Shown: piece by piece, positions 560 through 51,553 of the stretch
Numbering within the stretch: position 1 is the first letter of the stretch
Layout: every line of letters begins with the position of its first letter
NCBI RefSeq assembly: GCF_000143415.4
Contig: NW_003314303.1
Coordinates: 372,460-436,459 of the forward strand
DNA: 64,000 nucleotides
Source of the DNA: Selaginella moellendorffii
Lineage: Eukaryota; Plantae; Lycopodiophyta
Reading direction: 5' to 3'
Notes under the pieces: generated by a model
Seen by the model: only the letters and a program-made list of their open reading frames with translations
Told to the model about the DNA's origin: nothing
The model's database searches: none
Made by a program: the position numbers and the translations under genes

Positions 560-2122
560 TTCAGTGCTTCTCTTAAGAATTTCTAGATTTCAAAGCACAC
601 AAACTAGAAATCCCATGGCAATGACTCACAAGATTGCTGTTGATTGCATTGCACAATCAATTAGAGAATTAATATGTAATAAACACAAGCTGCCTTTGAA
701 AGCCCCTCTTAGGTAATCTACCACATTAACATTGTATGCCTAACACCGGAATCCAGGAAAATGATCATTGTGCATCTAGCTAGGGAGTTCCTTAAGGGTT
801 TAAGAGAAGCTGGGTGAAGAATGTGGTGCATTGCTTTCTATACTAGATGTTAAACCCCATCTTGCAGTAAATGTGCAAGAAAATGAATATGAAAGAGCTT
901 GAGCCACATGCAATTCCAAATTTCAACTTTGTTGTTGATTTGTTTGACCTAGATGCTTGAAGCCATGTATGCTCTTGTAGTGCTCTTGACAAAAGGGTTG
1001 GAAAAATCCTTGTATCTTTGACATCTCTTTATCACAGAGCTTGCAGATCGCTAAATTAAGGCTCTTGCTTCTGAATGACCATGCTCTTACTTGATCCTAC
1101 TGGATAACTTACAAAAGAAAAACAAAATAACTTAGAAGAAAGTTAAATGGGAAGGCACACATACATCAAAGGTTCGCTTTGGTTCTTGGCCCTGGATATC
1201 CATTTGTGGCAATGTTGAGCTCTCCTTCACCTTGTAGTAGCTCAAAAGAAATCATTTCAAGTACTTGCATCAAGGTATACAAAAAAAATGTCCTAACGAG
1301 AAAGAAAGTTACAAACTACTTCAAACCATCTTTGAGTCCATCAACTTTTCAGGGACTTGTCATTGGACGTGCAAGGGTTTTCCACAGCCAACCCTGTAAA
1401 CTCAAAACATCATGCTAGATACTAGTCTCCATAGTGAGAAGAATGTTACTTGTTTGTGGAATCATCCTACCTAGTCGAAGATATCTTGCTTGACATTTTG
1501 AACAACTTTCTTTGGACTTGGCTACCTCGTCCAGAGCTGCCACTGTCAATAGAGCCTAAAGATGCTCTCACTATGGATTTGTAATGATGAAAATCTTCTC
1601 TCTGGGCACAAGTAGAAGTTTAAGGCGCTGGAAGAGCTGCTGTCTCATAAGATTCGAGACGACACTGTCCCTACATTTGTATCCTCTAGTATAATTTTTG
1701 AACCTGCAAAGACTCTACATTTCCAATGGCAAAGTACTAAATCCAAACTTGAGAAACCAGCTCCAAAAACTAACAAAGCCACGAAAAAGGAAAAAGAAAA
1801 GGAAGAAAGAAAAAAAAAGGAGGAATGATCACACACCTTGTGCTGGATCTCTCTTCAATCTTTTAACCATATCCAGTGCCCTATTTAGTCCTTTAATCTG
1901 GTGTAGCGTAAAGAAGATGAAGACCATTCCTGAAAGACTTACAAAAACAAAATGTCACCTTCCCTCAGAAATCTCTTATTGCATGATCCATTCAGCTGCT
2001 CAAGTGGCAAGACCTAAGAATCCATGAGAGGTAGTGGTGTTAAACCCCAAAGAAAGAGATCTAGAAACAATACAATTGAGCAAGCAGTCAATTACCTATG
2101 CGAGTCTGGTACTTGTGCTCAT
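560..2122 (-). pseudogene. Degenerate multi-exon gene remnant of unknown product
   Basis: Several minus-strand GT...AG short introns (e.g. near 2095-2060, 1958-1930, 1163-1110) separate moderately GC segments with stops and a CSKC motif. No family recognised. Confidence 0.25.
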
Positions 2123-2681
2123 GTTTCTCTCATAAGCCCATTTTAGTCTCATTTAAATAAAGACTTAATATAGCTTTAGGGCATAAATGGCTTTCAATGG
2201 AATAACATTGAGAAGTAAGTAAAAGGTCTTTGATTGTTTCTATTGATCTAGATTATCAATTATCAGCCTTCACAAAGCTGTTGATTGAAAGATAGAGAAT
2301 TAATACTTGCTGAAAGTAGGCCAAAAATAGTTTATTTAGTTCTATTGTTGAATCTCTTTAAAAAATCTTAATCAGCTAAACAATCATAGAAAAAACTAAT
2401 CTGGATGCACCCACCTATCCGGTGGGTGTAAGGACATCAAGGGCAATAAGGGCATTTAACTGTAAAGGGCAAAATTATGACAAAGAGAAAATTTGAATGG
2501 ACAGAACTTCTAGAAGCAAAATTGTTATCAGTTCAAGGATCTGCAAATAAAAAAGCAAAAAAACTAAAATTCAACCATAATATTGATTTAACTGAGCAAC
2601 AAATTGTTTCTAGATACTATTATTTATCAAGAAAGAATGAAAATGAGTAAATAAAAACTATTAATATATCCAAAGAAAAAC

Positions 2682-4920
2682 ATGAAGAACTTACTCTACA
2701 AAATCAAAAAAAATATATATACAACAAAAGAAGACAAAATACTTATGGAAACTTGGAACTCACAAAAACAAACAAATGAAAAAATAAATATTTTTCGACA
2801 AAGAACAGGGAGTACTATATCAGATGAAAAACTTAAAAGAAGAGTATATTATATTAGAAGCAAAGAAAAAAAAACAATAAAAGAGAAAGAACAACAAGAA
2901 AATGAATATGACATGAACAATCCAAAAAGTATGAAAGCACTACAAATGTATAATGAAGCTATACAGGATATACTGATACATCCATGTAAAATATGTAAAA
3001 GACTTTGGTTTAAATATAATAAAAAAACAAGGATATGCATGCAATCAATGCATGACAAATAAAGAAACATATAAAAGTCCAGAAAAAATTAGAATGAATC
3101 AAATTGATCAATATACAGAACAACTAAATGATATTGAAGAGAAAATGATAGCTCTACATATTTTATTTGAAAATATAGCAATACCAAATCAACCTCAATA
3201 TCAGCAGTGCATAAAAGGAGGAATAATAAATGTCCCAACTAATATTAAACCAATAATTAATAAACTACCAAGATTATTTGAAGAAACACAAACAATAACA
3301 ATTCAGCTGAAACAAAGATTAACTGATAAATATTATTATAAATATGGAATAGCCAGACCACATTATATTTATAATAGTATAAAACAATTACAAGAAACCG
3401 AACTATATAAGAAAAATAAAATTAATATAGATGAAAACTGGTTTCAACAAGCACTAAATTTAGACAATATAGATAATAACATACAAATAATATTAGAAAA
3501 CAAATTACAACAAAAATTAAATGAAGATGATAAAAGTGAAAATCTTATAGACAACCCTGATAATGAGATATTACCAACAGATACTATAGTAATTATCTTC
3601 TTAGATGCAAATCAAATAGATAATTTTACAAATAAAGTTTTAGTTATAGCATCTGGTCAAGGACAACACCCATTAGGATTATTTGTAGATGGAAATGCTG
3701 AAAAAATGGCATATCCAAAACTATTTAGTGGAAAACAAAGACCATTAGACATAAAAAGAAAATTTACATATCAAGAAATAATCCAATGGGAATTAATGAA
3801 TGAGGATAGAAATTTGCATGACATATTAAATATATATTTACAGCAGCATTAAAAACTAAAATCAAATTTGTCAATCAAAATGTAGGTTTTAGATTAAGAA
3901 AATTTACTTATGAAGGAAGAAAAATCACATCAAAAGATGTGCTTGTAAATGGAAATATGGATAAAATATTAAAGTTAAACATAGGTTTTAGAGATTTAAA
4001 AAATCTAAGAATATCACCAGATAATTTAGAAGCACTAAAAAAAGATGCATTTGCGATGATAAAATAATTAGGAGCACCAACACTATTCTTAACTCTTAGT
4101 TGTTCAGAAAGACATTGGGAACCATTAATAAATGCTTTAAAACATTTAAATACAGATATATTACAAAAAGAAGAGATAAAAAATTTAAATGAAAAAGAGA
4201 AAATATATAAAATACTAAGAGCTGATCCAATCACCACAATACGATATTATGCACATAAAACATCAGCATTTAGAAACTTATTAATGTCCAATTATCACAT
4301 ATTTGGAAGGAAAGTAAAAGACTATGTATTTGTAACACAATTTCAACAACGTGGTACACCACATGAACATGCACTAATACGGTTAAAAAATCAACCACAA
4401 ACATTAGAACAAATAAAAGAATATGCTAATGAAAATATATGTACTGATTCAGAGAAACTACCAGATAATATAAAAGATGTTCAAACTCATAAACATAGAA
4501 AAACATGTAAGAAATATAAAAATATAAATTGTAGATTTAATTACCCAATTCCTCCAATTCCACAAACAGAAATCTTAGAGCCTATAAAAGACATTACAAA
4601 ACATGAAAAGGATTCATACAATAATTTACAAAAAAATGAAAACAATACTAGAAGATAAAACTATAGATTTAAAAACTTTAGAGTTTAATGAATATTTAAA
4701 AATAATAGGAATAACATATGAGCAATATAAAGCTACAATAAGATCAACAATAACAAATACAAAATATTGCATGTATTGAAATAGAAATTAAAATAACTTT
4801 ATACAGGTGAGGGAAATGCCAATTCAACAAGCACTTTTTTTAATATTGTCAATCCCATTTCATCATATTGTTAGAACTGTAAAGTTCATTGATCCTAAAC
4901 CACAACAACAACAAAAAAAA
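2682..4920 (+). pseudogene. Helitron Rep (HUH rolling-circle initiator) region with N-terminal Zn finger, frameshifted
   Basis: HPCKICKRLWF...ACNQC Zn finger; LNDIEEKMIA...IINVP...KLPR block; ASGQGQHPLGLF..AEKMAYPKLFSG; motif 1 GAPTLFLTLSCSE (4071-4109); motif 2 TQFQQRGTPHEHALI; CRFNYP. Several stops and frameshifts. Confidence 0.85.
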
Positions 4921-5020
4921 NNNNNNNNNNNNNNNNNNNNNNNNNNNNNNNNNNNNNNNNNNNNNNNNNNNNNNNNNNNNNNNNNNNNNNNNNNNNNNNN
5001 NNNNNNNNNNNNNNNNNNNN
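4921..5020. other. Assembly gap (100 N)
   Basis: Run of n characters. Confidence 1.
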
Positions 5021-5099
5021 AAAATGAAAAATAAAAGATAAAATATTAACAAATACAAACAATTATAATACAAGATGAATACCTTATGGAAACTAGTAA

Positions 5100-6560
5100 A
5101 TATCACCAATTATTAAGAACTCTTAATAAAAAGCAAAGAATAATACATGATGACTTCATATTGAAAAAAAATAAAACAACCTAACAAACAATTGTGTTTA
5201 TTTTTAACAGGAGGAACAGGAACTGGAAAATCAATGCTTTTAAATACACTTATAGAAACACTCAAATGATATTATAAAACAAACCAAGATATAAATAATG
5301 AACCAGGACAAACAATATTAATAACAGCACCTACAGAAAAAGCAGCTTGTAATATAAATGGTTCAACAATACATTCAGTTTTTGCATTTCGACTAGAAGC
5401 ATCAAAACAACGTCAAATAATATTAACAAATGACACATTAGATAAGTATAAAAGAAAGTTTTCAACAATAAAATGTTTAGTAATAGATGAAATATCAATG
5501 GTAAGTATAGAAATGCTACAAGATATAAATAGAAGATGTGAAAGCTTCAAAACAACAAATGGAATAGACTTTGGTGGGATGGATTGTATATTTACAGGTG
5601 ATTTCTATCAATTAAATCCTACATTTGAACACCAATTTATTCAAAAAAAACATATAGATCTGAAAATGATGTCTCCATACACCACCCATGGAAAATAATT
5701 TTAAAATCTATGAACTTACTGAAATAATGAGGCAAAAAGATGATATAATCTTTATAAAAGCTTTAAATAAAATAAAAATAGGAGAACAAACAGATAAAGA
5801 GCTAGAATATATAAATAAACAAGTCACNNNNNNNNNNNNNNNNNNNNNNNNNNNNNNNNNNNNNNNNNNNNNNNNNNNNNNNNNNNNNNNNNNNNNNNNN
5901 NNNNNNNNNNNNNNNNNNNNNNNNNNNNNNNNNNNNNNNNNNNNNNNNNNNNNNNNNNNNNNNNNNNNNNNNNNNNNNNNNNNNNNNNNNNNNNNNNNNN
6001 NNNNNNNGGGACTACATAAAATATTACATTTGAAAAAGAAAATGGCAATTGAAATAACACAAAATATAGCAATAGAAGATGGATTAGTAAATGGAGCAGA
6101 TGGAGTATTACAAGATGTAACCCAGATTGAAGAAGAACAAATAATATGGATAGAATTCCCAAATTTAAAAACAGGTGAAAAAACAAGAGCTAAAGAAAAC
6201 ATAACAATAAAGCAAAATAATGAAAAAAACTGGACACCAATAAAAAAAAATAACAAGAACAATAAATATTACTAAAAATAAAAACTATGTTATAAGTAGA
6301 ACCCAATTTCTAGTACAACCATGTGTAGGAAGAACAATACATAGAGCACAAGGATCAACAGTTATGCAATTAGGATATGACCCATATAAAACAAAATATC
6401 CAGAACAAGCATATACCGCATTATCAAGAGCACAAACACTAAAAGGGATACATTTATATAGACCAATTGAACATAAACACATTAAAATCAATAAAGATGC
6501 AACTAAAGAAATAATAAGAATGACAACAGAAGCACCATGGCAAATTGATTTAATAGATTT
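5100..6560 (+). pseudogene. Pif1-family (SF1B) helicase domain of the Helitron
   Basis: Walker A LFLTGGTGTGKS (about 5198-5233), ITAPTEKAACNINGSTIHS, LVIDEISMV, FGGMDCIFTGDFYQL, ELTEIMRQ, GLVNGADG, TIHRAQGST, QAYTALSRA. Frameshifted and contains an N gap. Confidence 0.9.
5828..6007. other. Assembly gap (180 N)
   Basis: Run of n characters. Confidence 1.
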
Positions 6561-38739: not shown

Positions 38740-40136
38740 TTAGATGAGACCTTGCAACATTTGCTCCACTTTCACAATGATCTGCGCCGGCTGTACCACC
38801 GTCGCGTCCTCCAGCGTTGCAGCGTAAGGTGTCGGGACGTCCTGTGACGACAAACACTCGGGCCGGCCATCGAGGAAGTCCCAGAAGTTGTCAACAATCG
38901 CAGCTCTCAAGCTGGCTCCAATCCCGCCAGTTCTCATGCACTCCTCCACGATGAGAACCTTGTGCGTTTTCTTGATCGAGTTCCCAATCGTGAAGAGATC
39001 AAAAGGCTTGAGCGACCTGATGTCGATGATCTCCGGATCATACCCTCGCTCCACCAGCGTCTTGGCAGCCTGGAGCACGAAGTGCCGCATCCTCGAGTAA
39101 GTCAGGATGGTGATATCCTTTCCCGGACGAACAAGCTCGGCCTCCTCGAGGCAAAGCACGTACTCCTCGTCGGGGATCCTCTCCTTGAGATTGTAGAGAA
39201 GGACGTGCTCGTAGAGGATCACCGGGTTGTCACTCCGGATCGCGGCCTTCATCAGTCCCTTTGCGTTGTATGGAGTGGAGCACGCCACCATTTGCAAGCC
39301 CGGGACTGACTGGAAGTACGACTCCAAACGCTGCGAGTGCTCGGCTCCAAGCTGCTTTCCAACCCCACCGGGGCCGCGGATCACCACCGGGATCTTAAAC
39401 TGACCACCCGACGTATAGTGGAGCATTCCAGCGTTGTTGGAGATCTGGTTGTAAGCCAGCAGCAAGAATCCCATGTTCATGCCTTCTACCACTGTCCGGA
39501 GTCCCGTCATGGCAGCGCCGATCCCCATTCCCGTGAAGGAGTTCTCGCAAATCGGCGTGTCCAGCACGCGCAAGTCGCCAAACTTCTCGGCCAGCCCTTT
39601 GGTGACTTTGTAGGAGCCTCCGTAGTGGCCGACGTCCTCTCCCATGACGCACACTGTGGGATCTCTCGCCATCTCCTCCTCGAGACCTTCGCGGAGAGCA
39701 TCGAAGAGCAAGATCTCGTGCCTGGGAAACAAAAGATATGGTCAAGCTTTGCAAAGAAAAGATTTTAGAACTATGGAAGAAAGAAACTCACCCAGACTTT
39801 GCAGTAACTGGAGCGGATGTTTCACCCTTTGCCTGCGAGCATGAAACGTTGAGAATCTTTAGCAATTTCGACCGAGACGACGAAAGCAAATGGAGAGGAG
39901 ATAGAACTTACCGCGACAGCTTTTAGCGCTAGGCTCTTGTTCTTCCTGCTAGAACTCTGAGACAACCCTCCACCAAATGCGATGGCCTGGGTGTGAACTG
40001 TAGCAAAAGCTTTCGATCAAAACCTTCCAAAACGAAAGAAGATCCTACCTCGGCTTGGAGAGAACTGGACGTTCCCGCAAGACGAAGACGAAGAACAAGG
40101 CACCAAAACCTTTTGAGCCATGGCCGCTGCTGCCAT
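38740..40136 (-). CDS. Plastid pyruvate dehydrogenase E1 beta subunit, copy 1
   Basis: [17 protein letters not shown]...[21 protein letters not shown]...[10 protein letters not shown]. Three short 5' exons encode a transit-like leader. Confidence 0.93.
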
Positions 40137-40449
40137 ATCCAAGAAACAGGAGCTCTCTCCTTCACCCAAGCCCTTCAATCTATCGTATATAATGGGCTTG
40201 GATGTAGCATTTTATAAATCGTAAAAAACAAAAGCCAGGCAGCGATTAGCCCGAGACCTTCGACAATCGAAGCACTTCGCCAATGCCGTTGGTTCTAGAT
40301 CCACAAAGAGGAGCCACCCAAACATCTGGACCGTCAATTTAGCCATGCAAAGTATTAGCGAATAGGACTCTGCCACGTTAGCAATAGAAAAAACATGTTG
40401 TTTGGTCACCAACACCTGTACTTTGTCAAATTCCATCAACAAGGAAAAA

Positions 40450-42640
40450 CGATTTGGTTGACAAAAATGAATCTATCAAATGATAGAAAACTTTGAAATA
40501 AAAATCATGCAAAGGAAGGAAAGAAACCACATTTATCTAATGCAAAAAAAATATTGTTATCTTTTGAAAAGAAGCAAAATTTTATTTTCTTTAATCAGTT
40601 TAAATTATAATAATTATTTAACAAGATCTACTTATTAGAATAAATATCTCTATAATTAAAAATGCCACCTTTTCTTTTTAATTATTTTCATTTTAGATGA
40701 TGGTGCTAGTGAACATTTAGCAATTAATTTTTTTTTGTGTAACACTTAAAAAATAAAAATGCAAATTAAATTAAAGAAAATTTTTGGTATAAAAATGAAT
40801 AAAAGGAAAAAGGTCAATATTTTATGGTATATAAAAGCATTATAATATAATATTGATTAAATATAATATAAAAATATAATATAAACAGACAAATATATTT
40901 GGTTAAAGAAAATAAATGGGTAATGAATGGAAAAAGCTATTAGAATGTTTGAGACTTGACCTTTTGTTATTATCTATATAATAAACTACAATTTATATAC
41001 CTTCACCAAAATTAAATTTATAGAGCATTTTTACATTGCACTAAGTGATAGGCATGTTATAGTAATATAAAAAAGAAATAACTAAATTATTAATAATTAT
41101 TTTATAATTCTTTTATAAAAAATATTTTTCTAATAACTTTATGATATTAACTATAATTTTTATTTTTATATTTTAAATTTACTTAATAAAATTTAAATAT
41201 TTTAACAACTTGTACTGTTTGCTAATACTACATTAAAATAATTCCAAAATATTTGTACCACTTAGCTTTGTCTCATAATTAAAGTTTTCAAAACTTTATG
41301 TTTTATGTAAAAAATAGCAAAAAATATAACATTAAAATATTTATATAAATAATTTTAATTTCTTTATCCTTCTGATATATAAATAAAAATTACTTATAAT
41401 TCTTAAAATAGCTTAAACTTTTAATAATAAAATAATGATTATATTTGTTAAATCATGATATAAGTAATATTTATGTAAAATATGTAATATTTTATTAAAA
41501 TCACTAAATTTTTAAATTTAAATTACATTTCATCTTAAAGAAAGAAATGTGCATTATTAAGAGGTTTTCTTTCAAATGCATGCAATTTAAATTTAAATAT
41601 TATTTACTTAAATTTTATTCTTTTAATTATATATATAGTATTAAGTATATGACATTACATTTTTCTTAGATTTTAGATTATGTTTTGGATTTTATAATAT
41701 TTTAATTTATATTTTGTTATTACTTAGTTAAGTACATAAGAAAGGCTCTTTATTATTATTATATTATCATAAAAGTATGTTTAAATTATTACATAATTTA
41801 AGCTCATATGTATGTAAAAATCTTTAAAAAAACCGTCAAATTTAGTGTCAAAATAGTTAGAAAGAGTTTATTTAATTTGGTATAAAAGGATTAGTCTGAA
41901 TGAGTATTATCTAATGAGAATGAGTAACTGAATACTATAGAATATCTAGAATATCCAGGCATATTCTAGATATATCCACTACCAAATCCTTAGTTAAGCA
42001 AACCAAAGAAAAAAATCAAGTAAGTATCCTTATTAAATATGTTAAATCAATTTACTAACACTTGAATAAAAGGGACTAATAAAGGAAAGTAATAGCATCA
42101 ACCACCATTATAGCAATAATAGAAAAATATTCAAAAAGACTTGCCAATCATATTTACAACATGTGTCCCTAGGTATGGATTTAGCATGTACTATCTGATA
42201 ACATGTTAAATCATGTTATCCTATCTCATACCATTTTATGCCATATTATTTGAGCTTTAGGTTGGGCTTATTTGATGAATTTTGGATGTATTGTTTATAT
42301 GAGTTTACACTTAGCTGAGGCATATTAGCAACTTAAAATTACACTTTGATTTGGTAAAATTAATGTTACCATAAGTTATTACTATATTACTGTTCGACAA
42401 ACACTGATAATATCTAGCTATCAAGACTTATTTAGGTCTTTTTTAATGAATTACAGTTTGTAAAAATAGTTTATAGTAAAATAATATAGCTTTATAAAAG
42501 ATAGGTTCTAATAAAAACTTTAAAACCTTCATTTATTCAATTTAAATTTCCTAAGACTTTTAATTGACTGACTTATTAAACTTAACTCAACTTAAGTTTA
42601 GACCATAAAATAAGTGGTTGTTACTACCCTACCAAACAGC
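40450..42640. other. Very AT-rich non-coding island (possible non-autonomous transposon remnant)
   Basis: About 2.2 kb with no ORF of 60 aa or more and a sharp composition change on both sides. No termini identified. Confidence 0.5.
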
Positions 42641-42649
42641 ACTTTGATG

Positions 42650-43570
42650 CAACATCCAGTGGCTCTGCCATCTCCTCGAAAACTTTAGTAGTTGCCACAA
42701 CTTCCACACTTTGCATGGAAAGCTTTACTTTTAGTCTAGCAAGGAAAGCTCGTGTATTAATAATCTCATCATGAGCTTGCAAGGTCTAGAGCAAATCTGC
42801 ATAGATCAAGATAAAACTTGTCCAGTTTGAATGGGAGTGGCAGGGTATCCTGTTGAAAACTCTCCTTGCATCCTCCAAACTTCCACACCTGATGTAAAAA
42901 TCCATGAGACTGTTCCTGGAAAACTTATCAGATGACACGGCTTGAACGTGAAGAGGCATGACTTTATCGAGAGTTTGGAGCAGCTTTCTAGTCTCGAGCT
43001 TGGTCTGTTCTTTAGCTGGCTATCCGGCGCAAGCGTTCAAAGAAGCAGCAAAAGTCACTCCATCGCGAGCAATCAAATTATAGCCATCACGGTCCCGAGG
43101 TTGGCCTGTTCTTCAGCTGCCATGCCGATGGAAGCGTTCAAAGCAGCAGCAAAAGTCACTCCATCGGGAGCGATCAAACTATAGCCATCTCTGTGTCGTC
43201 GAAGAAACGTCTGGAAATGCTCGTTAGCTACCTCTTTCTCGGTGTAGAAGTTCACCAGACTGCCTGCTACGAAATCATGCAGCAAGCTTTGATCGCTACA
43301 GCAAAGGTCACGGCATCCGGTGGAGCTCGAGTTTGATTTTCTAAGAGCATCCCGAGAGCCAACGATCTCTTGGCCATTGTCAGCGTAGATCAAAGCGTTC
43401 CAGGAGACAGCGTCGTGGAGGGGCATGAATCAAAGCGTTTGCGGTGCTTCCACTTCCACACTTGGAGTGCGACCAAGAGGTTGCCGGAAGCTACGTCTCT
43501 TGCGTGGATGGTCTTCCCTTGGCCTACATTCTTGCAGATTTGAGAGCGCCGAGATGGTGGAGCTCCAAGA
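42650..43570 (-). pseudogene. PPR (PLS-class) remnant, paralogous to 48240-49530
   Basis: DAVSWNALIYADNGQE, FVAGSLVNFY, APDGVTFAAALNA. Shares nucleotide blocks with 48240-49530. Confidence 0.8.
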
Positions 43571-43654: not shown

Positions 43655-44527
43655 TCATTCGTAATAGCGGGAGCGGGAGGAGAGAGGCGGCCCGTTTCGA
43701 AAGCTTTGCAGGATGTCCTCAAACTCGTGCCGCGAAGCCCAAGCGAGCCACGCCCTCTCGATAACATACGTCATAAGCTCCTCGGGCGTGCAGCTCTTGC
43801 GGAGCTTGCCCGAGACGGGAGGGAAGGGCGTATACGATTCCCCACCGGCAATGCAGTGCACCCGCAGCGGAAACGGCACCACCCCAGTGGCATCCAGCAC
43901 CAGCGACGCCACAACCTCCGCAAGCCGAGAGTTGCCATCCCCAAACGGCCTGAGCTTGGATCCAACGTCGAGAAATCCGCATGCGGCCACGCCAAACGCC
44001 GGCACCACCCTCTCCTCGACAGGCAACTCCAGCAGCGACGCCACCCCCGACTTGATCTCGCCGAGTTTGCTTGCCACCACAACGGCGCTCACACCCGCTC
44101 CGAGTCCCGCACCGCCGTTGACCACCCTGGCCTGGATGTCAGCTAGGGAGTGCAGGTCAAGGGCGAAGCCGGGTTTGACCGAGTGCAGGGCATATTCCAG
44201 GGCATCGCACATCCCCTGCGACTCGGCGCGCTGCTGGTCGCTGAGGTAGTCGGGGAAGTTGTACTCGAGGCATGCGCGGTTGGAGAGCGCCGAGTCCGGG
44301 TGGGGGATGAGGCGCTTGTCCCTCAGCCGCCCTGATGTGTCGCAGAAGTCGACGAGCTGTGCCTGCCACATTACCTGGGGTATCCTCGACGACGCAGCAG
44401 TAGTAGCGGCCGCAGCAATGTCCTTGACCATGTCTGATGTGCTGCGCTGCTTCTCTGGTTGCATCGTCAGCGCCCTCCACCAAGGCAGCTCCAACGGCCT
44501 CAACCTCATCGCCGCTTTGCTTGCCAT
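43655..44527 (-). CDS. Intronless Fic/Doc-domain protein with a degenerate active-site motif
   Basis: 290-aa GC-rich ORF; ESQGMCDALEY...LDLHSLADIQ and RPFGDGNSRLAE (43951-43916) versus the consensus HPFxDGNGRxxR. A TATATA lies about 30 bp upstream (44558-44563). Confidence 0.75.
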   Translation of the reverse strand: MASKAAMRLRPLELPWWRALTMQPEKQRSTSDMVKDIAAAATTAASSRIPQVMWQAQLVDFCDTSGRLRDKRLIPHPDSALSNRACLEYNFPDYLSDQQRAESQGMCDALEYALHSVKPGFALDLHSLADIQARVVNGGAGLGAGVSAVVVASKLGEIKSGVASLLELPVEERVVPAFGVAACGFLDVGSKLRPFGDGNSRLAEVVASLVLDATGVVPFPLRVHCIAGGESYTPFPPVSGKLRKSCTPEELMTYVIERAWLAWASRHEFEDILQSFRNGPPLSSRSRYYE

Positions 44528-44941
44528 CGATCCTTTCCTTCGACCCTACCGTGACTGTATATAGTCTTAGGCTTTAACCATTATTCTCGTTTGCTAAGCA
44601 ACAGAGAAAAATCTATGAGACATACCCTTGAAGCTATGCATATGAAACCATACCTTGTTACAGCAGCACCATGCTTCACTCCAAGAGTAAAAGCAACAAG
44701 AGCATGGGACCAAGAAGAAGAAACAACTCACCATTTTCTTGATGGAAGACCAGGAGCTTCGATGGCAGTGCAGCCACTACTTCTCGAGCTTCCACAGCTC
44801 ACATATCGATGGTGATTCCAGGCATACTTGACGGACCGCTTGTTCATCTCGAACCTCTCGAGCCGAATTTGATCAGATGGTGGAGAAGACGAGGCTGTGT
44901 ACTCTAGACGCTCCATCGACTCACTCCTTTATTCCACTACC

Positions 44942-47004
44942 TCAAGAAATGATGAATTGCTCATAGGCCACGTCCACCAGGAAGGCAGCAACATCCGTCG
45001 TGTCACACTCCGGAACGCTCTCCAATGGAATGACACTGGCCTTGTTTGTCCTCGACAACGCGAGCGAATGTAGCATCCAAGTTCTCGCTGGCGTACAGTC
45101 CGTGTTCTCAGGGAGGCGCACATATCTTCCTCCGAGGCTGTCCTGGAGAAGCATTACCGTTACTTTTCTGCAAGAAAAGTTCTCAGTTACAAATGAATGG
45201 TAGAAAACAAAAAGACAAAGATATAAACCTTGACACTCGACCATTGCCATCGCGGAATGGGTGAATTTCTAGGAACTCCACCATGTACCGCGCAGCAAGA
45301 GTAAAGTGCTTGCAGAGCGAACATGTTTGTGTGAGCTGGTGGTCTTCCTCAGCAAGGATCTCCCACTGTAAAGGCAGTGATTAAATCGGCTAATATAATA
45401 AACTCACCTCTATGGTCAGTGCCCGGATCCACGCAGAGAGACAGCACTCAATGGCTTTCCAATCAAGAAAGCTTTGCCGCACACCATCACGTAGAGTCAA
45501 ACTATAAGCGTGAGAAGTTCGTAGCTGTTTCTCCACGGGATTCAGCGCAATCACATCATCTATAGTAAGGCTCCGTGCGTCCAGCTTTGCAAGGAAATCT
45601 GGTGGCGTGTGAGGGACTCGTGGAAGCCTGGAGAGCTTAGCCACCATAGAGGACGTAGACAAAGCCTCGTGCCATGAAGGATGAGCCGACGTGCTTCTCC
45701 ACGGGGAAACTCGGAAATGCTCCCCTCGCAAATCTTGCTGTTTGAAACAAGTCAAGACTCACGCAAAAGAAATAGAACTCCAAGATACCTGGTGCCTTCC
45801 CTGCCACAGTTCGTCCTTGACATTGGCAAGAAAAAAGGATGAACAAAAAGCATTAGAAGTACGTAAGGATTCGTGACGAAGCAAATGGGCCAGTACCTGG
45901 TGCAGAGCCGCGGATTGAGAATCCCGAGCAGGAGACATGGACACTAGAAAAAAGCGTTGCAATGAGAATGAAGAACTTTGATAGTCAGAGCACCTGTGGC
46001 GTGGAGACAAGTATTGGAGGGCTGTCCAACAGGCGGAGATCACTGGAGAGAACACTGAAAGCATTAAAAACAAGTAGGAGTCCTAGACGAATAAAACAAC
46101 CTGGTGCAAAGGCTGCGGGTCGACTCATACAAGGCATGGACACTGGGAAAAAGAAGAATGAATTAGAAGGAGAATAGAGGTAAAATGGAGTATCGAAAGC
46201 ACCTGCGACGTGGAGACTGGTATTCAAGGCTGCTCTGGCTGTCCAACAGGCTGCGACCACTGGAAAGAAAAAATGTAAAAACAAGTAGGAACCTTAGACG
46301 AATAAAACAACCTGGTGAATAGGCTGCCGGTAGAGAAGGTCGACTCATACGAGACATGGACACTGGAAAAAAGAAGAATGCGTTAGAATGAAAATAAAGG
46401 TAAATGGAGTACAGAAGAGCACCTGCGACGTGAAGACTGGTATTCAAGGCTGCTTTGGCTGTCCAACATGCTGCGCTCACTGGAAAGAAAAAAAGGAAGC
46501 ATTAGAAACAAGTAGGAATCCTACAGAAAGCCAACAACGGGCCAACAACCTGGTGGATAGGCCGCGGGTAGAGAAGGTCGAGTCATATGAGACATGGTCA
46601 CTAGAAAACACAAGAACAATGCGTTGGAATGAGAATGAACGTTGATAATGGACTAACCTGCGGCGTAGAGACAGGTATTCAGGGCTGATCAGGCCGTCGA
46701 ACAGGCTGCAATCGATGGAAGCCAAGCGCCTTCCACAGCAGGAGGCCGGCACAACACTGTAAGGATGACACGAAAGAAAGACATGAACGAGAGAATGTTG
46801 CGGAACGATCCCTGGTGCGATGCTTTGAAGCGAATCGTCTAGAATGCATACCTGGATTCGATATTTCGAACAAGCAGGGCTCGATTTGCTTCTCCACATG
46901 CCACGAATCCTGAAATTCCAGAGGATCGATACATCGATTCAGCGAGCAGACGATCGATATTACGGACCTGAGGCCTTCACCCTGCCGACGAGAGAGCGCA
47001 TCAT
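44942..47004 (-). CDS. Multi-exon Fic/Doc-domain protein with an intact catalytic motif; core exons 45737-45408, 45365-45229, 45167-44942; 5' mini-exons up to ATG 47004 (connection to the core unresolved)
   Basis: Phase-compatible GT-AG splicing gives SLTIDDVIALN...LRTSHAY...IECCLSAWI...|WEILAEE...FTLAARYMVEFLEIHPFRDGNGRVSR|KVTVMLL...EQFIIS*. Confidence 0.8.
45897..46756 (-). repeat. Tandem array of about four two-exon units (period about 220 bp)
   Basis: A-type exons 46600-46550, 46362-46312, 46142-46101, 45943-45897 alternate with B-type exons 46756-46658, 46479-46423, 46259-46203, 46042-45994, and the introns are homologous too. Confidence 0.85.
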
Positions 47005-47874: not shown

Positions 47875-49550
47875 TCATATCCAGCAAAGCTTGTACGCAA
47901 CTCTTGCCACCACGGGATTTTTCCACTTCCAGCAGGCACCGAGAATACTTCTCCAGATCCCGGCATTTTCTTCCAAAGCCATGCCTTTTACCAAGCTCAG
48001 AGCAGCCTCGAGTTTGCCGGCTCGGCCGTAGAGATCGACCATTGCGCTATAGTGTTCTAAGCTCGGAGAAGCTCCATACTTGGATACCATCGTCTCGAAA
48101 CAGCGAGCTCCTTTCTCCACAAGGCCTGCGTGACTGCAAGCTGTGAGGAAGCACAGCAACGAGCTGGAGCTCACTCGCATAAACTCGCCCTCCATCTTGT
48201 GGAAAACTCCGAGTTTCTCCACAAGGCCTGCGTGACTGCATCTCCGGCTCTTCGTACTCGGCTTAGATCGATATCAAACTCGTGCAGTTTGAATGGGAGT
48301 GGCAGGGCATCCTGTCGAAAACTCCTTCCACACCTGGCGTACAAATCCATGACACTGTTCCCGACACTCCTGCAAAACTTATCGCCCGACAAGCTCTTCT
48401 CGGCTTGAACGTGAAGAGCCATGACTTTGTCGAGAGTTTTGAGCAGCTCTCCAGTCCCGAGTTTGGCCTGTTTTATCGCTGCCATGCCGCCGCAAGTGTT
48501 CAAAGCAGCAGCAAACGTCACTCCATCGGGAGCGATCCAACTATATCCATCTCTGTGTCGTTGAAGAAACCTCTGGAAAAGCTCGTAAGCCACCTCTCCC
48601 TGGCCATTCTCAGCATATCCCAAGATCAGAGCGTTCCATGACACCACATCTGGCTGCTTTATCCTGTCGAAAACCCTCTCGAGCCTGCTCCACCCGTCCA
48701 CACTTTGCGTAGAAGTTCACCAGACTGGCCGCTACGAAATCATCGCTTCCAAATCCGAGCTTCTCAGCTTGCAAGCGTAAGTCTCTCCCCTTGAGCAGCA
48801 TCACCGCCTTCTTCCCATCCTCTTTCACGGCCAAGTTCGGCCAAGCTTTGATCACTGCAACAAAAGTCCGCAAGTTTGGCAAGCATCTAGCAGCGTCCAT
48901 GCCTGCCGAGAACAAATCCAAACTCACTCCAAGATCTCTGGAAGAACTAGTATCAGCATACCCGAGAAGGAGCGAGGTGACGACGTCGTGACGAACCATC
49001 CTATCGAAAACTCTGCGAGAATCCAGCAAACTCCCACACTTTGCGCAGACATCCACGAGCGAGCTCACCACAACAATGTCCTGCTCAAATCCCATCCTTG
49101 CAGCTCGAGAGTGACTGTGAAAAATGTAGAGGAATGGGAGGGAAAGCCTCGATCTTTGTAAGAAGCTCACTATGGATGTTTCTTTCCTCGCCAGGTTTGA
49201 TCGCTGCAGCAAAGGTCACGGCATCCGGTGGAGCTTGAGTTTGATTTTCTAGCAGCATCTCCGTTAGCGTCTCGAGCGCCAAGATCTCTTGGCCATTGTC
49301 AGCGTAGCACAGGATCAAAGCGTTTCAGGGGGCAGCGTCATGGAGGGGCATGGAATCAAAGACCCTGGTCGCGTTTGCGGTGCTTCCACACTTGGAGTAA
49401 CAAGGCTGCTGGCGACCAAGAGGGTGGATTCGTTGCCGGAAGCTATGGCTCTTGCGTGGATCGTCTTTGCTTGGCCTGCATTCTAGATTTGAGAGCTGCC
49501 AGGAGCGATAATAAGGTTGAGCTCCAGCTCAAGATGAGAAAAACTTCTTG
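47875..49550 (-). pseudogene. PPR (PLS/E) pseudogene
   Basis: SSLVDVCAKCGSLLDSRRVFDRM, DVVSWNALILGYAENG, LTACSHAGLVEKG...EHYSAMVDLYGRAGKL. Frameshifted. Confidence 0.85.
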
Positions 49551-50190: not shown

Positions 50191-51553
50191 CTAGACAAGC
50201 CCTTGGCACATTTGCTCCACTTTCACCACAATCTGTGCCGGTTGCACCACCGTCGCGTCCTCCAGCGTCGCAGCGTATGGCGTCGGCACGTCCTGCGATG
50301 ACAAACACTCGGGCCGGCCGTCGAGGAAGTCCCAGAAGTTGTCAACAATCGCAGCTCTCAAGCTCGCTCCAATCCCGCCAGTTCTCATGCACTCCTCCAC
50401 GATGAGAACCTTGTGCGTCTTCTTGATCGAGTTTCCAATCGTAAAGAGATCGAAAGGCTTGAGCGACCTGATGTCGATGATCTCCGGATCATAGCCTCTC
50501 TCCACCAGAGTCTTGGCAGCCTGGAGCACGAAGTGCCGCATCCTCGAGTACGTGAGAATGGTGACGTCCTTTCCCGGACGAACAAGCTCGGCTTCCTCGA
50601 GACAAAGCACATACTCCTCGTCGGGGATCCTCTCCTTGAGATTGTAGAGAAGGACGTGCTCGTAGAGGATCACCGGGTTGTCACTCCGGATCGCGGCCTT
50701 CATCAGTCCCTTCGCGTTGTAAGGAGTGGAGCATGCCACCATTTGCAAGCCCGGGACCGACTGGAAGTACGACTCCAAGCGCTGTGAGTGCTCGGCTCCA
50801 AGCTGCTTTCCCACTCCACCGGGACCTCTGATAACGATCGGGATCTTGAACTGGCCACCCGAAGTATAGTGGAGCATTCCCGCGTTGTTGGAGATCTGGT
50901 TGTAAGCCAGCAGCAAGAATCCCATGTTCATGCCTTCCACCACTGTCCTGAGTCCCGTCATGGCAGCTCCAATCCCCATCCCCGTGAAAGAGTTCTCGCA
51001 AATCGGCGTGTCGAGGACGCGCAAGTCGCCAAACTTCTCGGCCAGTCCCTTGGTGACTTTGTAGGAGCCTCCGTAGTGACCGACATCTTCGCCTATGACG
51101 CACACTGTGGGATCTCTTGCCATCTCTTCCTCGAGACCTTCGCGAAGAGCATCGAAGAGCAAGATCTCGTGACTGGAAGTAAAGAACCAAGTGAAAAACT
51201 AGATTTTGGAGGCTGAAACTTGTAAGAACTTACCCGGATTTCGCAGTGGTCAGATTCGGAGCTTCGCCTTTCACCTACACGCATGATGGGTAAAACTTCT
51301 CTGTCGGTAGGAAGAACTTACCGCGACAGCTTTTAGCGCAGAGCTCCTGTTCTTCCTCGATTCCTCGCTCAATGCAGCTCCTCTAACGACAAGGGCGCCT
51401 GAAAGAAGGCTTCATCGAGAAATTCCCGGAGACAGCGAGCTGATTACCTCGAGCTGGAACAGCCGATGAAGAGCACCGGATCCGCCCAGCATTTGGCGGC
51501 GACAGCAGCCGATTCTCAATGCCGGGAGCAAGCGCCGCTCCTGCCGCGGCCAT
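50191..51553 (-). CDS. Plastid pyruvate dehydrogenase E1 beta subunit, copy 2
   Basis: Mature region nearly identical in protein to copy 1; leader [17 protein letters not shown]... is spliced through short introns. Confidence 0.93.

What the first reader, a model, noticed from the sequence alone, without database searches (positions are those of the whole stretch)
44942..45737. Catalytically intact spliced Fic gene hidden from the ORF track
The motif exon (45365-45229) is under 60 codons and bounded by 42-nt and 61-nt GT-AG introns. The last Arg of HPFRDGNGRVSR is formed across the splice junction (AG|A). All three core exons join in phase with no stops. Short host-type introns argue that the gene is integrated in the plant genome and is not bacterial contamination. 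An ancient horizontal origin is possible but is inference.
Basis: partly seen in the sequence, partly recalled or inferred. Interest (0 to 1): 0.75.

Follow-up and report, generated by a model that had tools for sequence, protein, structure and literature searches.

The report
Spliced Fic enzyme gene in spikemoss
The spikemoss Selaginella moellendorffii carries a real, intron-containing nuclear gene for a very divergent Fic-type protein-modifying enzyme with a perfect catalytic motif. The gene is already in public databases as an unstudied "Fido domain-containing protein", so it is a sound but modest find.

Summary
On the minus strand, exons 45737-45408, 45365-45229 and 45167-44942 join in phase across GT-AG introns of 42 and 61 nt. 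They encode HPFRDGNGRVSR, with the last Arg split AG|A across the second junction.

A public gene model (EFJ19178.1, SELMODRAFT_419342, UniRef D8S8L8, 410 aa, "Fido domain-containing protein") uses exactly these junctions as exons 11-13 of 13. A 99%-identical allele model lies on another contig. The gene is therefore hidden only from a plain ORF list, not from annotation.

- **Sequence similarity:** Pfam and HMMER align about 40 residues to Fic proteins; profile-profile alignment reaches 72 columns.
- **Fold:** an AlphaFold model built with 74 prokaryotic Fic sequences gives pLDDT 80-94 for residues ~225-410. It matches only Fic structures (Z 15.1 for 3cuc, Z 14.6 for FICD).
- **Other features:** there is no inhibitory-helix motif, no TPR domain and no relative outside the species.
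- **N-terminus:** the Ser-rich extension built from tandemly repeated mini-exons is read in different frames in the two allele models, so its coding status is doubtful.
- **Neighbour:** a degenerate Fic-like gene (RPFGDGNSR) lies 415 nt downstream.

Horizontal origin cannot be tested. The scan noted what is probably the other allele before, on another piece of this genome (s1-351354).

The parts
45408..45737 (-). It covers the N-terminal part of the Fic core, including the predicted beta-hairpin flap (aa 259-269).
   Evidence: phmmer gives 100% identity to P0001 residues 181-289. The flap comes from the AF2 model.
45645..45647 (-). In-frame ATG (Met211 of P0001). This is an alternative start that would give a 200-aa minimal Fic protein.
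   Evidence: The confident fold begins near aa 222. Minimal Fic proteins (VbhT, EcFicT, NmFic) align from aa 218-221.
45366..45407 (-). Intron of 42 nt, GT-AG, GC 0.33.
45229..45365 (-). Exon 12, the motif exon (137 nt), aa 291-336. It carries His325 and the HPFRDGNGRVS motif.
   Evidence: (Pfam Fic E 8.1e-9).
45168..45228 (-). Intron of 61 nt, GT-AG, GC 0.30. It splits the codon of Arg336 (AG|A).
44942..45167 (-). Exon 13, aa 336(3rd base)-410 plus the TGA stop. It holds the C-terminal helices of the Fic core.
45789..47004 (-). Exons 1-10 of the public model (aa 1-180). This is a Ser/Leu/Arg-rich N-terminal extension, mostly mini-exons of 27-99 nt separated by GT-AG introns of 46-178 nt. It is predicted disordered and its coding status is uncertain.
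   Evidence: pLDDT mostly below 50; frame differences between allele models; decaying repeat units.
46065..46493 (.). Tandem repeat with a 220-bp period. Each unit holds two mini-exons (about 51 and 57 nt, 36 codons together) and two introns. About four units lie between 46602 and 45738, and the last two are decayed.
45897..45943 (-). A 47-nt mini-exon copy that P0001 skips. The other allele's model (P0004) includes a 17-codon equivalent.
45703..45706 (-). Run of four C. P0004 reads SKICEGSISEFP in another frame up to this point, then switches to the Fic frame. That implies one extra base in the other haplotype.
43655..44527 (-). Neighbouring 290-codon ORF, 415 nt downstream on the same strand. 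It is a Fic-like protein with a degenerate motif, RPFGDGNSRLAE (His to Arg, Gly to Ser, last Arg to Glu).

Best explanation
This is a genuine nuclear gene of Selaginella moellendorffii (SELMODRAFT_419342). Its last three exons encode a complete but very divergent Fic (Fido) domain.

**Shown here**
- The exon-intron structure.
- The canonical motif HPFRDGNGRVSR, with His325, Asp329, Asn331, Arg333 and Arg336.
- A predicted Fic fold with a beta-hairpin flap ahead of helices alpha3 and alpha4, the motif loop, and three C-terminal helices.

**Inferred**
- By analogy with characterised Fic enzymes, the protein transfers a nucleotide monophosphate, most likely AMP from ATP, to a hydroxyl side chain of a target protein.
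- In that scheme His325 acts as the base, the flap positions the target, and the two motif arginines hold the beta and gamma phosphates.
- The robust core has no (S/T)xxxE(G/N) inhibitory helix, so the enzyme is not expected to be auto-inhibited as class I-III Fic proteins are. It is also not expected to act as a FICD-type deAMPylase.

The target and the cellular role are unknown. The protein is not an orthologue of animal FICD.
For: - **Motif and Pfam:** Fic scores 36.6 bits for exon 12 alone and 37.3 bits for P0001, against a threshold of 24.
- **Public model:** it has the same junctions. All 12 introns are GT-AG, 42-178 nt long. Intron GC is 0.30-0.33 against 0.52-0.53 in the exons.
- **Allele:** the model on another contig is 99% identical in the core, with 3 substitutions and no indels in aa 192-410.
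- **Plant genes on both sides**.
- **Profile-profile alignment:** against 74 prokaryotic Fic ORFs it covers aa 263-346, crossing both junctions, with probability 98.2%.
- **ESM features:** for aa 192-410, 30 of 30 nearest clusters are Fic, score 0.95.
- **AF2:** with the 76-row alignment, pLDDT is 80-94 for aa ~225-410.
- **Fold search:** the top Foldseek hits are all Fic, E 2.7e-4, probability 1.0. VIA gives Z 15.1 (3cuc_B; rmsd 4.2 A over 187 residues), 14.6 (FICD 4u04; rmsd 2.6 A over 158 residues) and 12.1 (VbhT). All 50 entries listed are Fic proteins.
Against: - HMMER and Pfam align only about 40 residues to Fic proteins.
- Exons 11 and 13 alone hit no family.
- AF2 with the two allele models only gave pLDDT 32. 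The confident model depends on an alignment made of Fic proteins, so it tests compatibility and is not independent proof.
- The helical-bundle Z values are only a little above the 13-14 that the tool warns can occur for helical models.
- The reading frame upstream of aa 192 differs between the allele models. It is therefore uncertain whether the annotated start can deliver the Fic core in this haplotype.
Confidence: 0.7

Rival explanations
1. The real product is only the ~200-aa core starting at Met211 (ATG 45647-45645). It would be a minimal stand-alone Fic protein like class I toxins, but without a partner helix. The repeated mini-exons upstream would then be 5' UTR or mis-modelled sequence, not an N-terminal domain.
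For: - The two allele models read different frames between the last repeat unit and aa 192. They also differ by frame-changing indels there, and P0001 has to skip a 47-nt mini-exon to stay open.
- There are no indels in the core.
- The confident fold starts at about aa 222.
- VbhT, EcFicT and NmFic align from aa 218-221 to the C-terminus.
- The neighbouring Fic-like ORF starts at the equivalent point (weak, z about 2).
Against: - Exons 1-8 keep an open frame with regular GT-AG mini-exons, and the two alleles are nearly identical there.
- An mRNA with many upstream ATGs would translate Met211 poorly.
- Position -3 of this ATG is T.
- No transcript data were available.
Confidence: 0.35
2. The fold is Fic but the chemistry is not AMPylation. 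It could be UMPylation, GMPylation, phosphocholination or another transfer, or binding only with no catalysis.
For: - Characterised Fic proteins with the same core motif use different donors (established knowledge: AvrAC with UMP, AnkX with CDP-choline; AnkX and a CDP-bound Fic structure are among the structural matches).
- The parts outside the motif are too divergent to predict donor or target.
Against: The motif matches the full AMPylation consensus HPFx(D/E)GN(G/K)R followed by xxR (consensus quoted in PMC2686095). Most canonical-motif Fic enzymes tested use ATP (established knowledge).
Confidence: 0.2
3. The locus, at least on this haplotype, is a decaying, non-functional lineage-specific gene. 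Its motif survives by chance or because the loss of function is recent.
For: - It is an orphan. No relative of exon 11 turned up among 1.84 billion cluster representatives. The word search of aa 181-410 found only its own allele.
- There are frame-changing differences upstream of the core and decayed repeat units.
- The adjacent paralogue-like gene has already lost the catalytic residues.
Against: - The core is open and 99% identical in both alleles, and every motif residue is intact.
- All splice sites are canonical.
- An earlier scan note reports transcription of what is probably the other allele (s1-351354; not tested here).
Confidence: 0.12
4. The sequence is bacterial contamination or a very recent bacterial insertion.
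For: Fic genes are overwhelmingly prokaryotic, and the best motif-region matches are in bacterial and archaeal MAGs and viral contigs.
Against: - The gene has twelve spliceosomal-type GT-AG introns with low GC.
- Plant genes lie on both sides within the same 64-kb window.
- It sits on a 1.66-Mb scaffold and a second allele is on a 1.08-Mb scaffold.
- No close prokaryotic relative was found.
Confidence: 0.01

Closest known systems
Bacterial and archaeal stand-alone Fic proteins of the COG3177 / SoFic type (for example PDB 8uqu from Bordetella, 3eqx and 3zcn SoFic, and 3cuc BT_2513)
   Same: Identical catalytic motif plus the flanking helices. 8uqu gives E 2.6e-5 over aa 311-355. The best structural match is 3cuc at Z 15.1. 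Motif-region identity to MAG genes is 40-51%.
   Different: 72 of the 74 prokaryotic ORFs fetched here carry the (S/T)xxxE(G/N) inhibitory motif (66 of them at one shared N-terminal alignment column); P0001 has none. There is no C-terminal winged-helix part. Outside about 70 columns there is no detectable sequence similarity. The plant gene has 12 introns.
Animal FICD / HYPE / Fic-1 (ER AMPylase and deAMPylase of BiP)
   Same: A eukaryotic, intron-containing Fic gene with the same motif. The structural match is Z 14.6, rmsd 2.6 A over 158 residues.
   Different: There is no TPR domain and no other Pfam domain. There is no hydrophobic membrane anchor by inspection of the N-terminus. There is no inhibitory Glu motif, which FICD needs for deAMPylation (established knowledge). 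Sequence identity is only 18-20%. [quoted passage not shown]
Class I Fic toxins (VbhT, EcFicT) with a separate antitoxin that supplies the inhibitory helix
   Same: The core is about 200 residues with no inhibitory helix of its own. The fold aligns from aa 218 to 404-408 at Z about 12.
   Different: No small antitoxin-like gene was identified. The neighbouring gene is a 290-aa degenerate Fic-like protein without the (S/T)xxxE(G/N) motif. The setting is eukaryotic.
Other Fic genes of Selaginella noted by this scan (about 30 notes, including a family shared with ferns)
   Same: Same genome, same domain family, same canonical motif (these are leads that I did not check).
   Different: None of them appeared as a relative of this protein at E <= 0.01 in the word search of aa 181-410. 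None appeared in the full search with exon 11. This gene is therefore a separate, much more divergent lineage.

Membership tests
Fic/Fido (Pfam PF02661, Fic subfamily) | Catalytic motif HxFx(D/E)GN(G/K)RxxR | tested here: met
   HPFRDGNGRVSR at aa 325-336. It is invariant in the alignment with 74 prokaryotic Fic ORFs.
Fic/Fido (Pfam PF02661, Fic subfamily) | Score above the curated Pfam threshold | tested here: met
   37.3 bits against 24 for P0001; 36.6 bits for exon 12 alone. Only profile positions 59-93 of 93 are matched.
Fic/Fido (Pfam PF02661, Fic subfamily) | Fic fold: helical core with the motif between alpha4 and alpha5, preceded by a beta-hairpin flap | tested here: met
   AF2 model with pLDDT 80-94 for aa ~225-410, a hairpin at 259-269, and helices 273-297, 303-324, 331-346, 362-376 and 393-409. 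Only Fic structures are matched, Z up to 15.1. Caveat: the alignment used for the model consisted of Fic proteins, and a two-sequence alignment gave no usable model.
Fic/Fido (Pfam PF02661, Fic subfamily) | His-dependent NMP (AMP) transfer to a protein hydroxyl | not testable with these tools
   Needs a biochemical assay.
Fic classes I-III (Engel et al. 2012 classification, from established knowledge) | Inhibitory helix motif (S/T)xxxE(G/N), in cis (N- or C-terminal) or on a partner protein | tested here: not met
   No match in P0001 or in the neighbouring ORF. The other allele's model has SKICEG at aa 205-210, in a frame that is not joined to the Fic core in this window. By my estimate a chance match somewhere in the protein is about 30-40% likely.
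FICD / HYPE orthologues | N-terminal membrane anchor plus TPR repeats plus a Fic domain with an inhibitory Glu | tested here: not met
   Pfam finds only Fic. There is no inhibitory motif. The N-terminal 220 residues are Ser-rich and low-confidence.
Doc toxins (kinase-type Fido) | Motif variant HxFx(D/N)(A/G)NKR | tested here: not met
   Position 332 is Gly, not Lys. The DOC_P1 model scores 17.9 bits against a cut-off of 38.65.

The most novel reading that the evidence does not exclude
The catalytically intact Fic gene and the adjacent Fic-like gene that has lost His, Gly and Arg of the motif may form a conserved eukaryotic enzyme/pseudoenzyme pair. Both proteins also have gene models on one 1.08-Mb scaffold of the other haplotype. 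In this reading the dead copy regulates, targets or decoys the active one in trans. It would stand in for the inhibitory helix the active enzyme lacks, as a plant counterpart of a Fic toxin-antitoxin module.
Probability: 0.07. Interest if true: 0.65.

Novelty: new member of a known kind. Interest (0 to 1): 0.35.

Why it matters
Fic enzymes are well studied in bacteria and animals, and one plant ER-stress review read here states that FICD is not conserved in plants (PMC11088923). A lycophyte with an intron-rich, motif-perfect but otherwise orphan Fic gene shows that land plants can keep this chemistry. Notes from this scan suggest it is one of several Fic genes in the genome. If the enzyme is active, it offers a route into AMPylation-type signalling in a plant, and an example of a Fic core with no recognisable auto-inhibition. 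The gene is already annotated automatically, nothing about its function is shown here, and its origin cannot be traced, so the present value is mainly as a documented candidate.

Tried and rejected
- **Word search with exon 11 (115 aa):** nothing, because the public model is 410 aa and outside the length band.
- **BLASTP, hhalign and shuffle tests between the Fic gene and the neighbouring ORF:** only the motif region is similar (E 0.002; 21 columns; local z 3.4). The N-terminal resemblance in the MAFFT alignment is not significant (z about 2). Recent tandem duplication is therefore rejected and ancient paralogy stays unproven.
- **AF2 with only the two allele models:** unusable, pLDDT 32.
- **Close relatives in 185,579 prokaryotic genomes with the protein alone:** none.
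- **Motif-based scans of prokaryotic genomes and viral contigs:** matches cover 18-105 residues of P0001, nearly all centred on the motif, and are too short for a phylogeny. The horizontal-transfer question was dropped as untestable.
- **NCBIfam, PADLOC and PHROGs:** only sub-threshold motif-region hits, which assign no subfamily.
- **Literature searches for the locus tags and for Fic plus Selaginella:** nothing.
- **The look-up of encoding contigs:** it was closed, so I could not look for transcript contigs or fetch the other haplotype's DNA. Expression and dN/dS are therefore untested.
- **Look-up of earlier findings by sequence:** blank.
- **Joining the exons:** Exons were searched separately by reference, and all whole-protein steps used the public model P0001 returned by the database.

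Full report
**Observation**

I read the minus strand of 44500-46300 and translated the three proposed exons by reference.
- Exon 45737-45408 (330 nt).
- Intron 45407-45366 (42 nt, GTGAGT...ACAG).
- Exon 45365-45229 (137 nt).
- Intron 45228-45168 (61 nt, GTTTAT...GCAG).
- Exon 45167-44942 (226 nt with the TGA stop).

The introns have GC 0.33 and 0.30, against 0.52-0.53 in the exons. The middle exon encodes ...EIHPFRDGNGRVS, and the last Arg is AG|A across the junction. With the intron retained the codon would be AGG, also Arg, but the frame then stops 17 codons later (ORF 45183..45284).

Only this 33-aa ORF carries the motif in the mechanical ORF list, so "hidden from the ORF track" is literally true. 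The middle exon alone passes the Pfam Fic threshold (36.6 bits against 24, E 8.1e-9). Exons 11 and 13 alone hit nothing.

**How the spliced model was handled**

- The word search with exon 11 found nothing within its length band.
- The full HMMER search of exon 11 against 1.84 billion cluster representatives found one real hit, P0001. It is 410 aa and 100% identical at residues 181-289. Two spurious repeat proteins also appeared.
- P0001 is EFJ19178.1, SELMODRAFT_419342, UniRef100_D8S8L8, "Fido domain-containing protein", from Selaginella moellendorffii on a 1.66-Mb scaffold.

All later whole-protein steps used this public protein id.

**Gene structure**

P0001 maps to 13 exons between 47004 and 44942. 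All 12 introns are GT-AG and 42-178 nt long.

Exons 3-10 are mini-exons from a 220-bp tandem repeat whose unit holds two exons and two introns (36 codons per unit). TRF finds 46065-46493, and about four units are visible, the last two decayed. They encode a Ser/Leu/Arg-rich extension that AF2 leaves at low confidence.

A second model, P0004 (435 aa, LOC9653009, on a 1.08-Mb scaffold, presumably the other haplotype), is 99% identical from aa 192 onward, with 3 substitutions and no indels. Upstream it differs:
- It includes a 17-codon mini-exon whose copy here is 47 nt and is skipped by P0001.
- It has a longer exon 10.
- It reads window 45739-45704 in another frame (SKICEGSISEFP). It then joins the Fic frame at the C-run 45706-45703, which implies one extra base in that haplotype.

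Frame-changing differences therefore cluster just upstream of the core, and none lie inside it. This makes the N-terminal extension doubtful as coding sequence, at least on this haplotype. It also makes Met211 (ATG 45647-45645) a serious alternative start.

**Is it a Fic domain beyond the motif?**

- HMMER-type searches align only about 40 residues. These include Pfam aa 309-343 and PDB 8uqu at E 2.6e-5 over aa 311-355. NCBIfam, PADLOC and PHROGs gave the same motif-region result. So did HMMs that I built from 74 prokaryotic Fic ORFs.
- Profile-profile alignment against those 74 ORFs reaches 72 columns (aa 263-346) at 98.2% probability. It runs unbroken across both splice junctions, and the conserved Trp of the bacterial profile falls on Trp291, the first residue of exon 12.
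- Language-model features of aa 192-410 place it among Fic clusters (30 of 30, score 0.95).
- AF2 with the two allele models alone failed (pLDDT 32).
- With a 76-row alignment (the two alleles plus the 74 ORFs, motif columns invariant), pLDDT is 80-94 for aa ~225-410. The model has a beta hairpin at 259-269 followed by helices 273-297 and 303-324. The motif loop comes next, then helices 331-346, 362-376 and 393-409.
- Foldseek returns Fic proteins as its top hits (E 2.7e-4, probability 1.0).
- VIA-align gives Z 15.1 (3cuc_B; rmsd 4.2 A over 187 residues), 14.6 (FICD 4u04, rmsd 2.6 A over 158 residues), about 12 (VbhT, EcFicT) and 11 (NmFic). All 50 listed entries are Fic proteins.

Caveat: the alignment that made the model confident consists of Fic proteins, so this shows compatibility with the fold and is not independent proof. 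The helix positions in the failed shallow model were nevertheless nearly the same.

**What kind of Fic**

There is no (S/T)xxxE(G/N) inhibitory motif in P0001, whereas 72 of the 74 prokaryotic ORFs have one, 66 of them at one shared N-terminal alignment column. P0004 has SKICEG at aa 205-210, but in this window that frame is not joined to the core. By my estimate a chance match is not unlikely. There is no TPR or other domain. The motif is the Fic type, not the Doc type.

The protein is therefore a stand-alone Fic core, not a FICD orthologue. It resembles class I toxins in size and in lacking its own inhibitory helix.

The mechanism is inferred from characterised Fic enzymes and from the motif consensus quoted in PMC2686095. 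It would be His325-dependent transfer of AMP, or another phosphate-linked group, to a target hydroxyl held by the flap.

**Relatives and origin**

- No relative outside the species appeared for exon 11 in the full search, nor for aa 181-410 in the word search.
- None appeared in prokaryotic genomes with the protein alone.
- Motif-based scans of prokaryotic genomes and viral contigs give matches of 18-105 residues at 28-78% identity. These are too short for a phylogeny.

Horizontal origin therefore cannot be assessed. Contamination is excluded by the introns, by the flanking PPR, MatE and E1-beta-like genes, and by the two scaffolds.

**Neighbour**

A 290-codon ORF (43655-44527) lies 415 nt downstream on the same strand. 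Its motif is RPFGDGNSRLAE, with the catalytic His, the second Gly and the last Arg replaced.
- Its counterpart on the other scaffold, P0005 (SELMODRAFT_424463, also named "Fido domain-containing"), keeps the same degenerate motif and is 99% identical.
- Evidence that it is Fic-like: ESM features (29 of 30 clusters in the Fic set, 0.95). hhalign to the Fic ORFs gives 88% probability over 68 columns. Its best PDB sequence hit is the Fic protein 4rgl (E 0.42, 89 residues).
- It resembles the active gene only at the motif.

It is most simply read as an old, catalytically dead Fic-like paralogue. A functional pairing is speculation.

**What is known**

No paper mentions the locus tags or Fic domains in Selaginella. 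The 2009 Fido paper lists eukaryotic Fic only in metazoa and a few fungi. [quoted passage not shown]

This scan holds about 30 notes on Fic genes in this genome. One of them (s1-351354, a "14-exon" Fic gene on another piece) is probably the other allele of this gene and reached the same conclusion. A look-up by sequence was blank, so that identity is not confirmed.

**Verdict**

The observation and the main interpretation hold. The gene is real, resident and motif-intact, and its public model folds as Fic. It is already annotated automatically, its function and expression remain untested here, its N-terminus is uncertain, and its origin is untraceable. It is a new, very divergent member of a known family, of modest interest.

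Noticed in passing
window 43655-44527 (-): A 290-codon ORF encodes a Fic-like protein with a degenerate motif, RPFGDGNSRLAE (His to Arg, Gly to Ser, Arg to Glu). It lies 415 nt downstream of the active Fic gene. This exact protein is not in the public collection. The other haplotype's model (P0005, 264 aa) omits a 20-aa stretch, possibly by a 60-nt intron.
   Followed up: partly
window 45738-46602 (-); TRF 46065-46493: A 220-bp tandem genomic repeat whose unit contains two mini-exons and two short GT-AG introns. It builds a 36-residue Ser-rich protein repeat, and the units decay towards the Fic core. Exon-pair amplification by tandem duplication is unusual enough to deserve its own look.
   Followed up: partly
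window 38740-39732 (-) and 50191-51162 (-): Two uninterrupted ORFs, apparently intronless copies of a transketolase-family gene, look like pyruvate dehydrogenase E1 beta (Pfam Transket_pyr plus Transketolase_C). They are 98% identical as protein but about 91-92% identical as DNA. They lie 11,451 bp apart and bracket the PPR gene and both Fic-type genes.
   Followed up: partly
window 47875-49212 (-): PPR-repeat coding sequence is split over three overlapping ORFs in different frames (47875..48222, 48171..48701, 48610..49212). It is either a frameshifted PPR pseudogene or a gene that needs RNA editing or splicing to be read.
   Followed up: no
window 40001-42000 and 2001-6000: Very AT-rich blocks (GC 0.22-0.27) within otherwise ~0.45-0.54 GC sequence. 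I did not examine what they contain.
   Followed up: no
window 42938-43194 and 48401-48556: A 101-bp tandem duplication (42991-43189) has a third, 83%-identical copy inside the PPR region. It looks like a small dispersed repeat.
   Followed up: no
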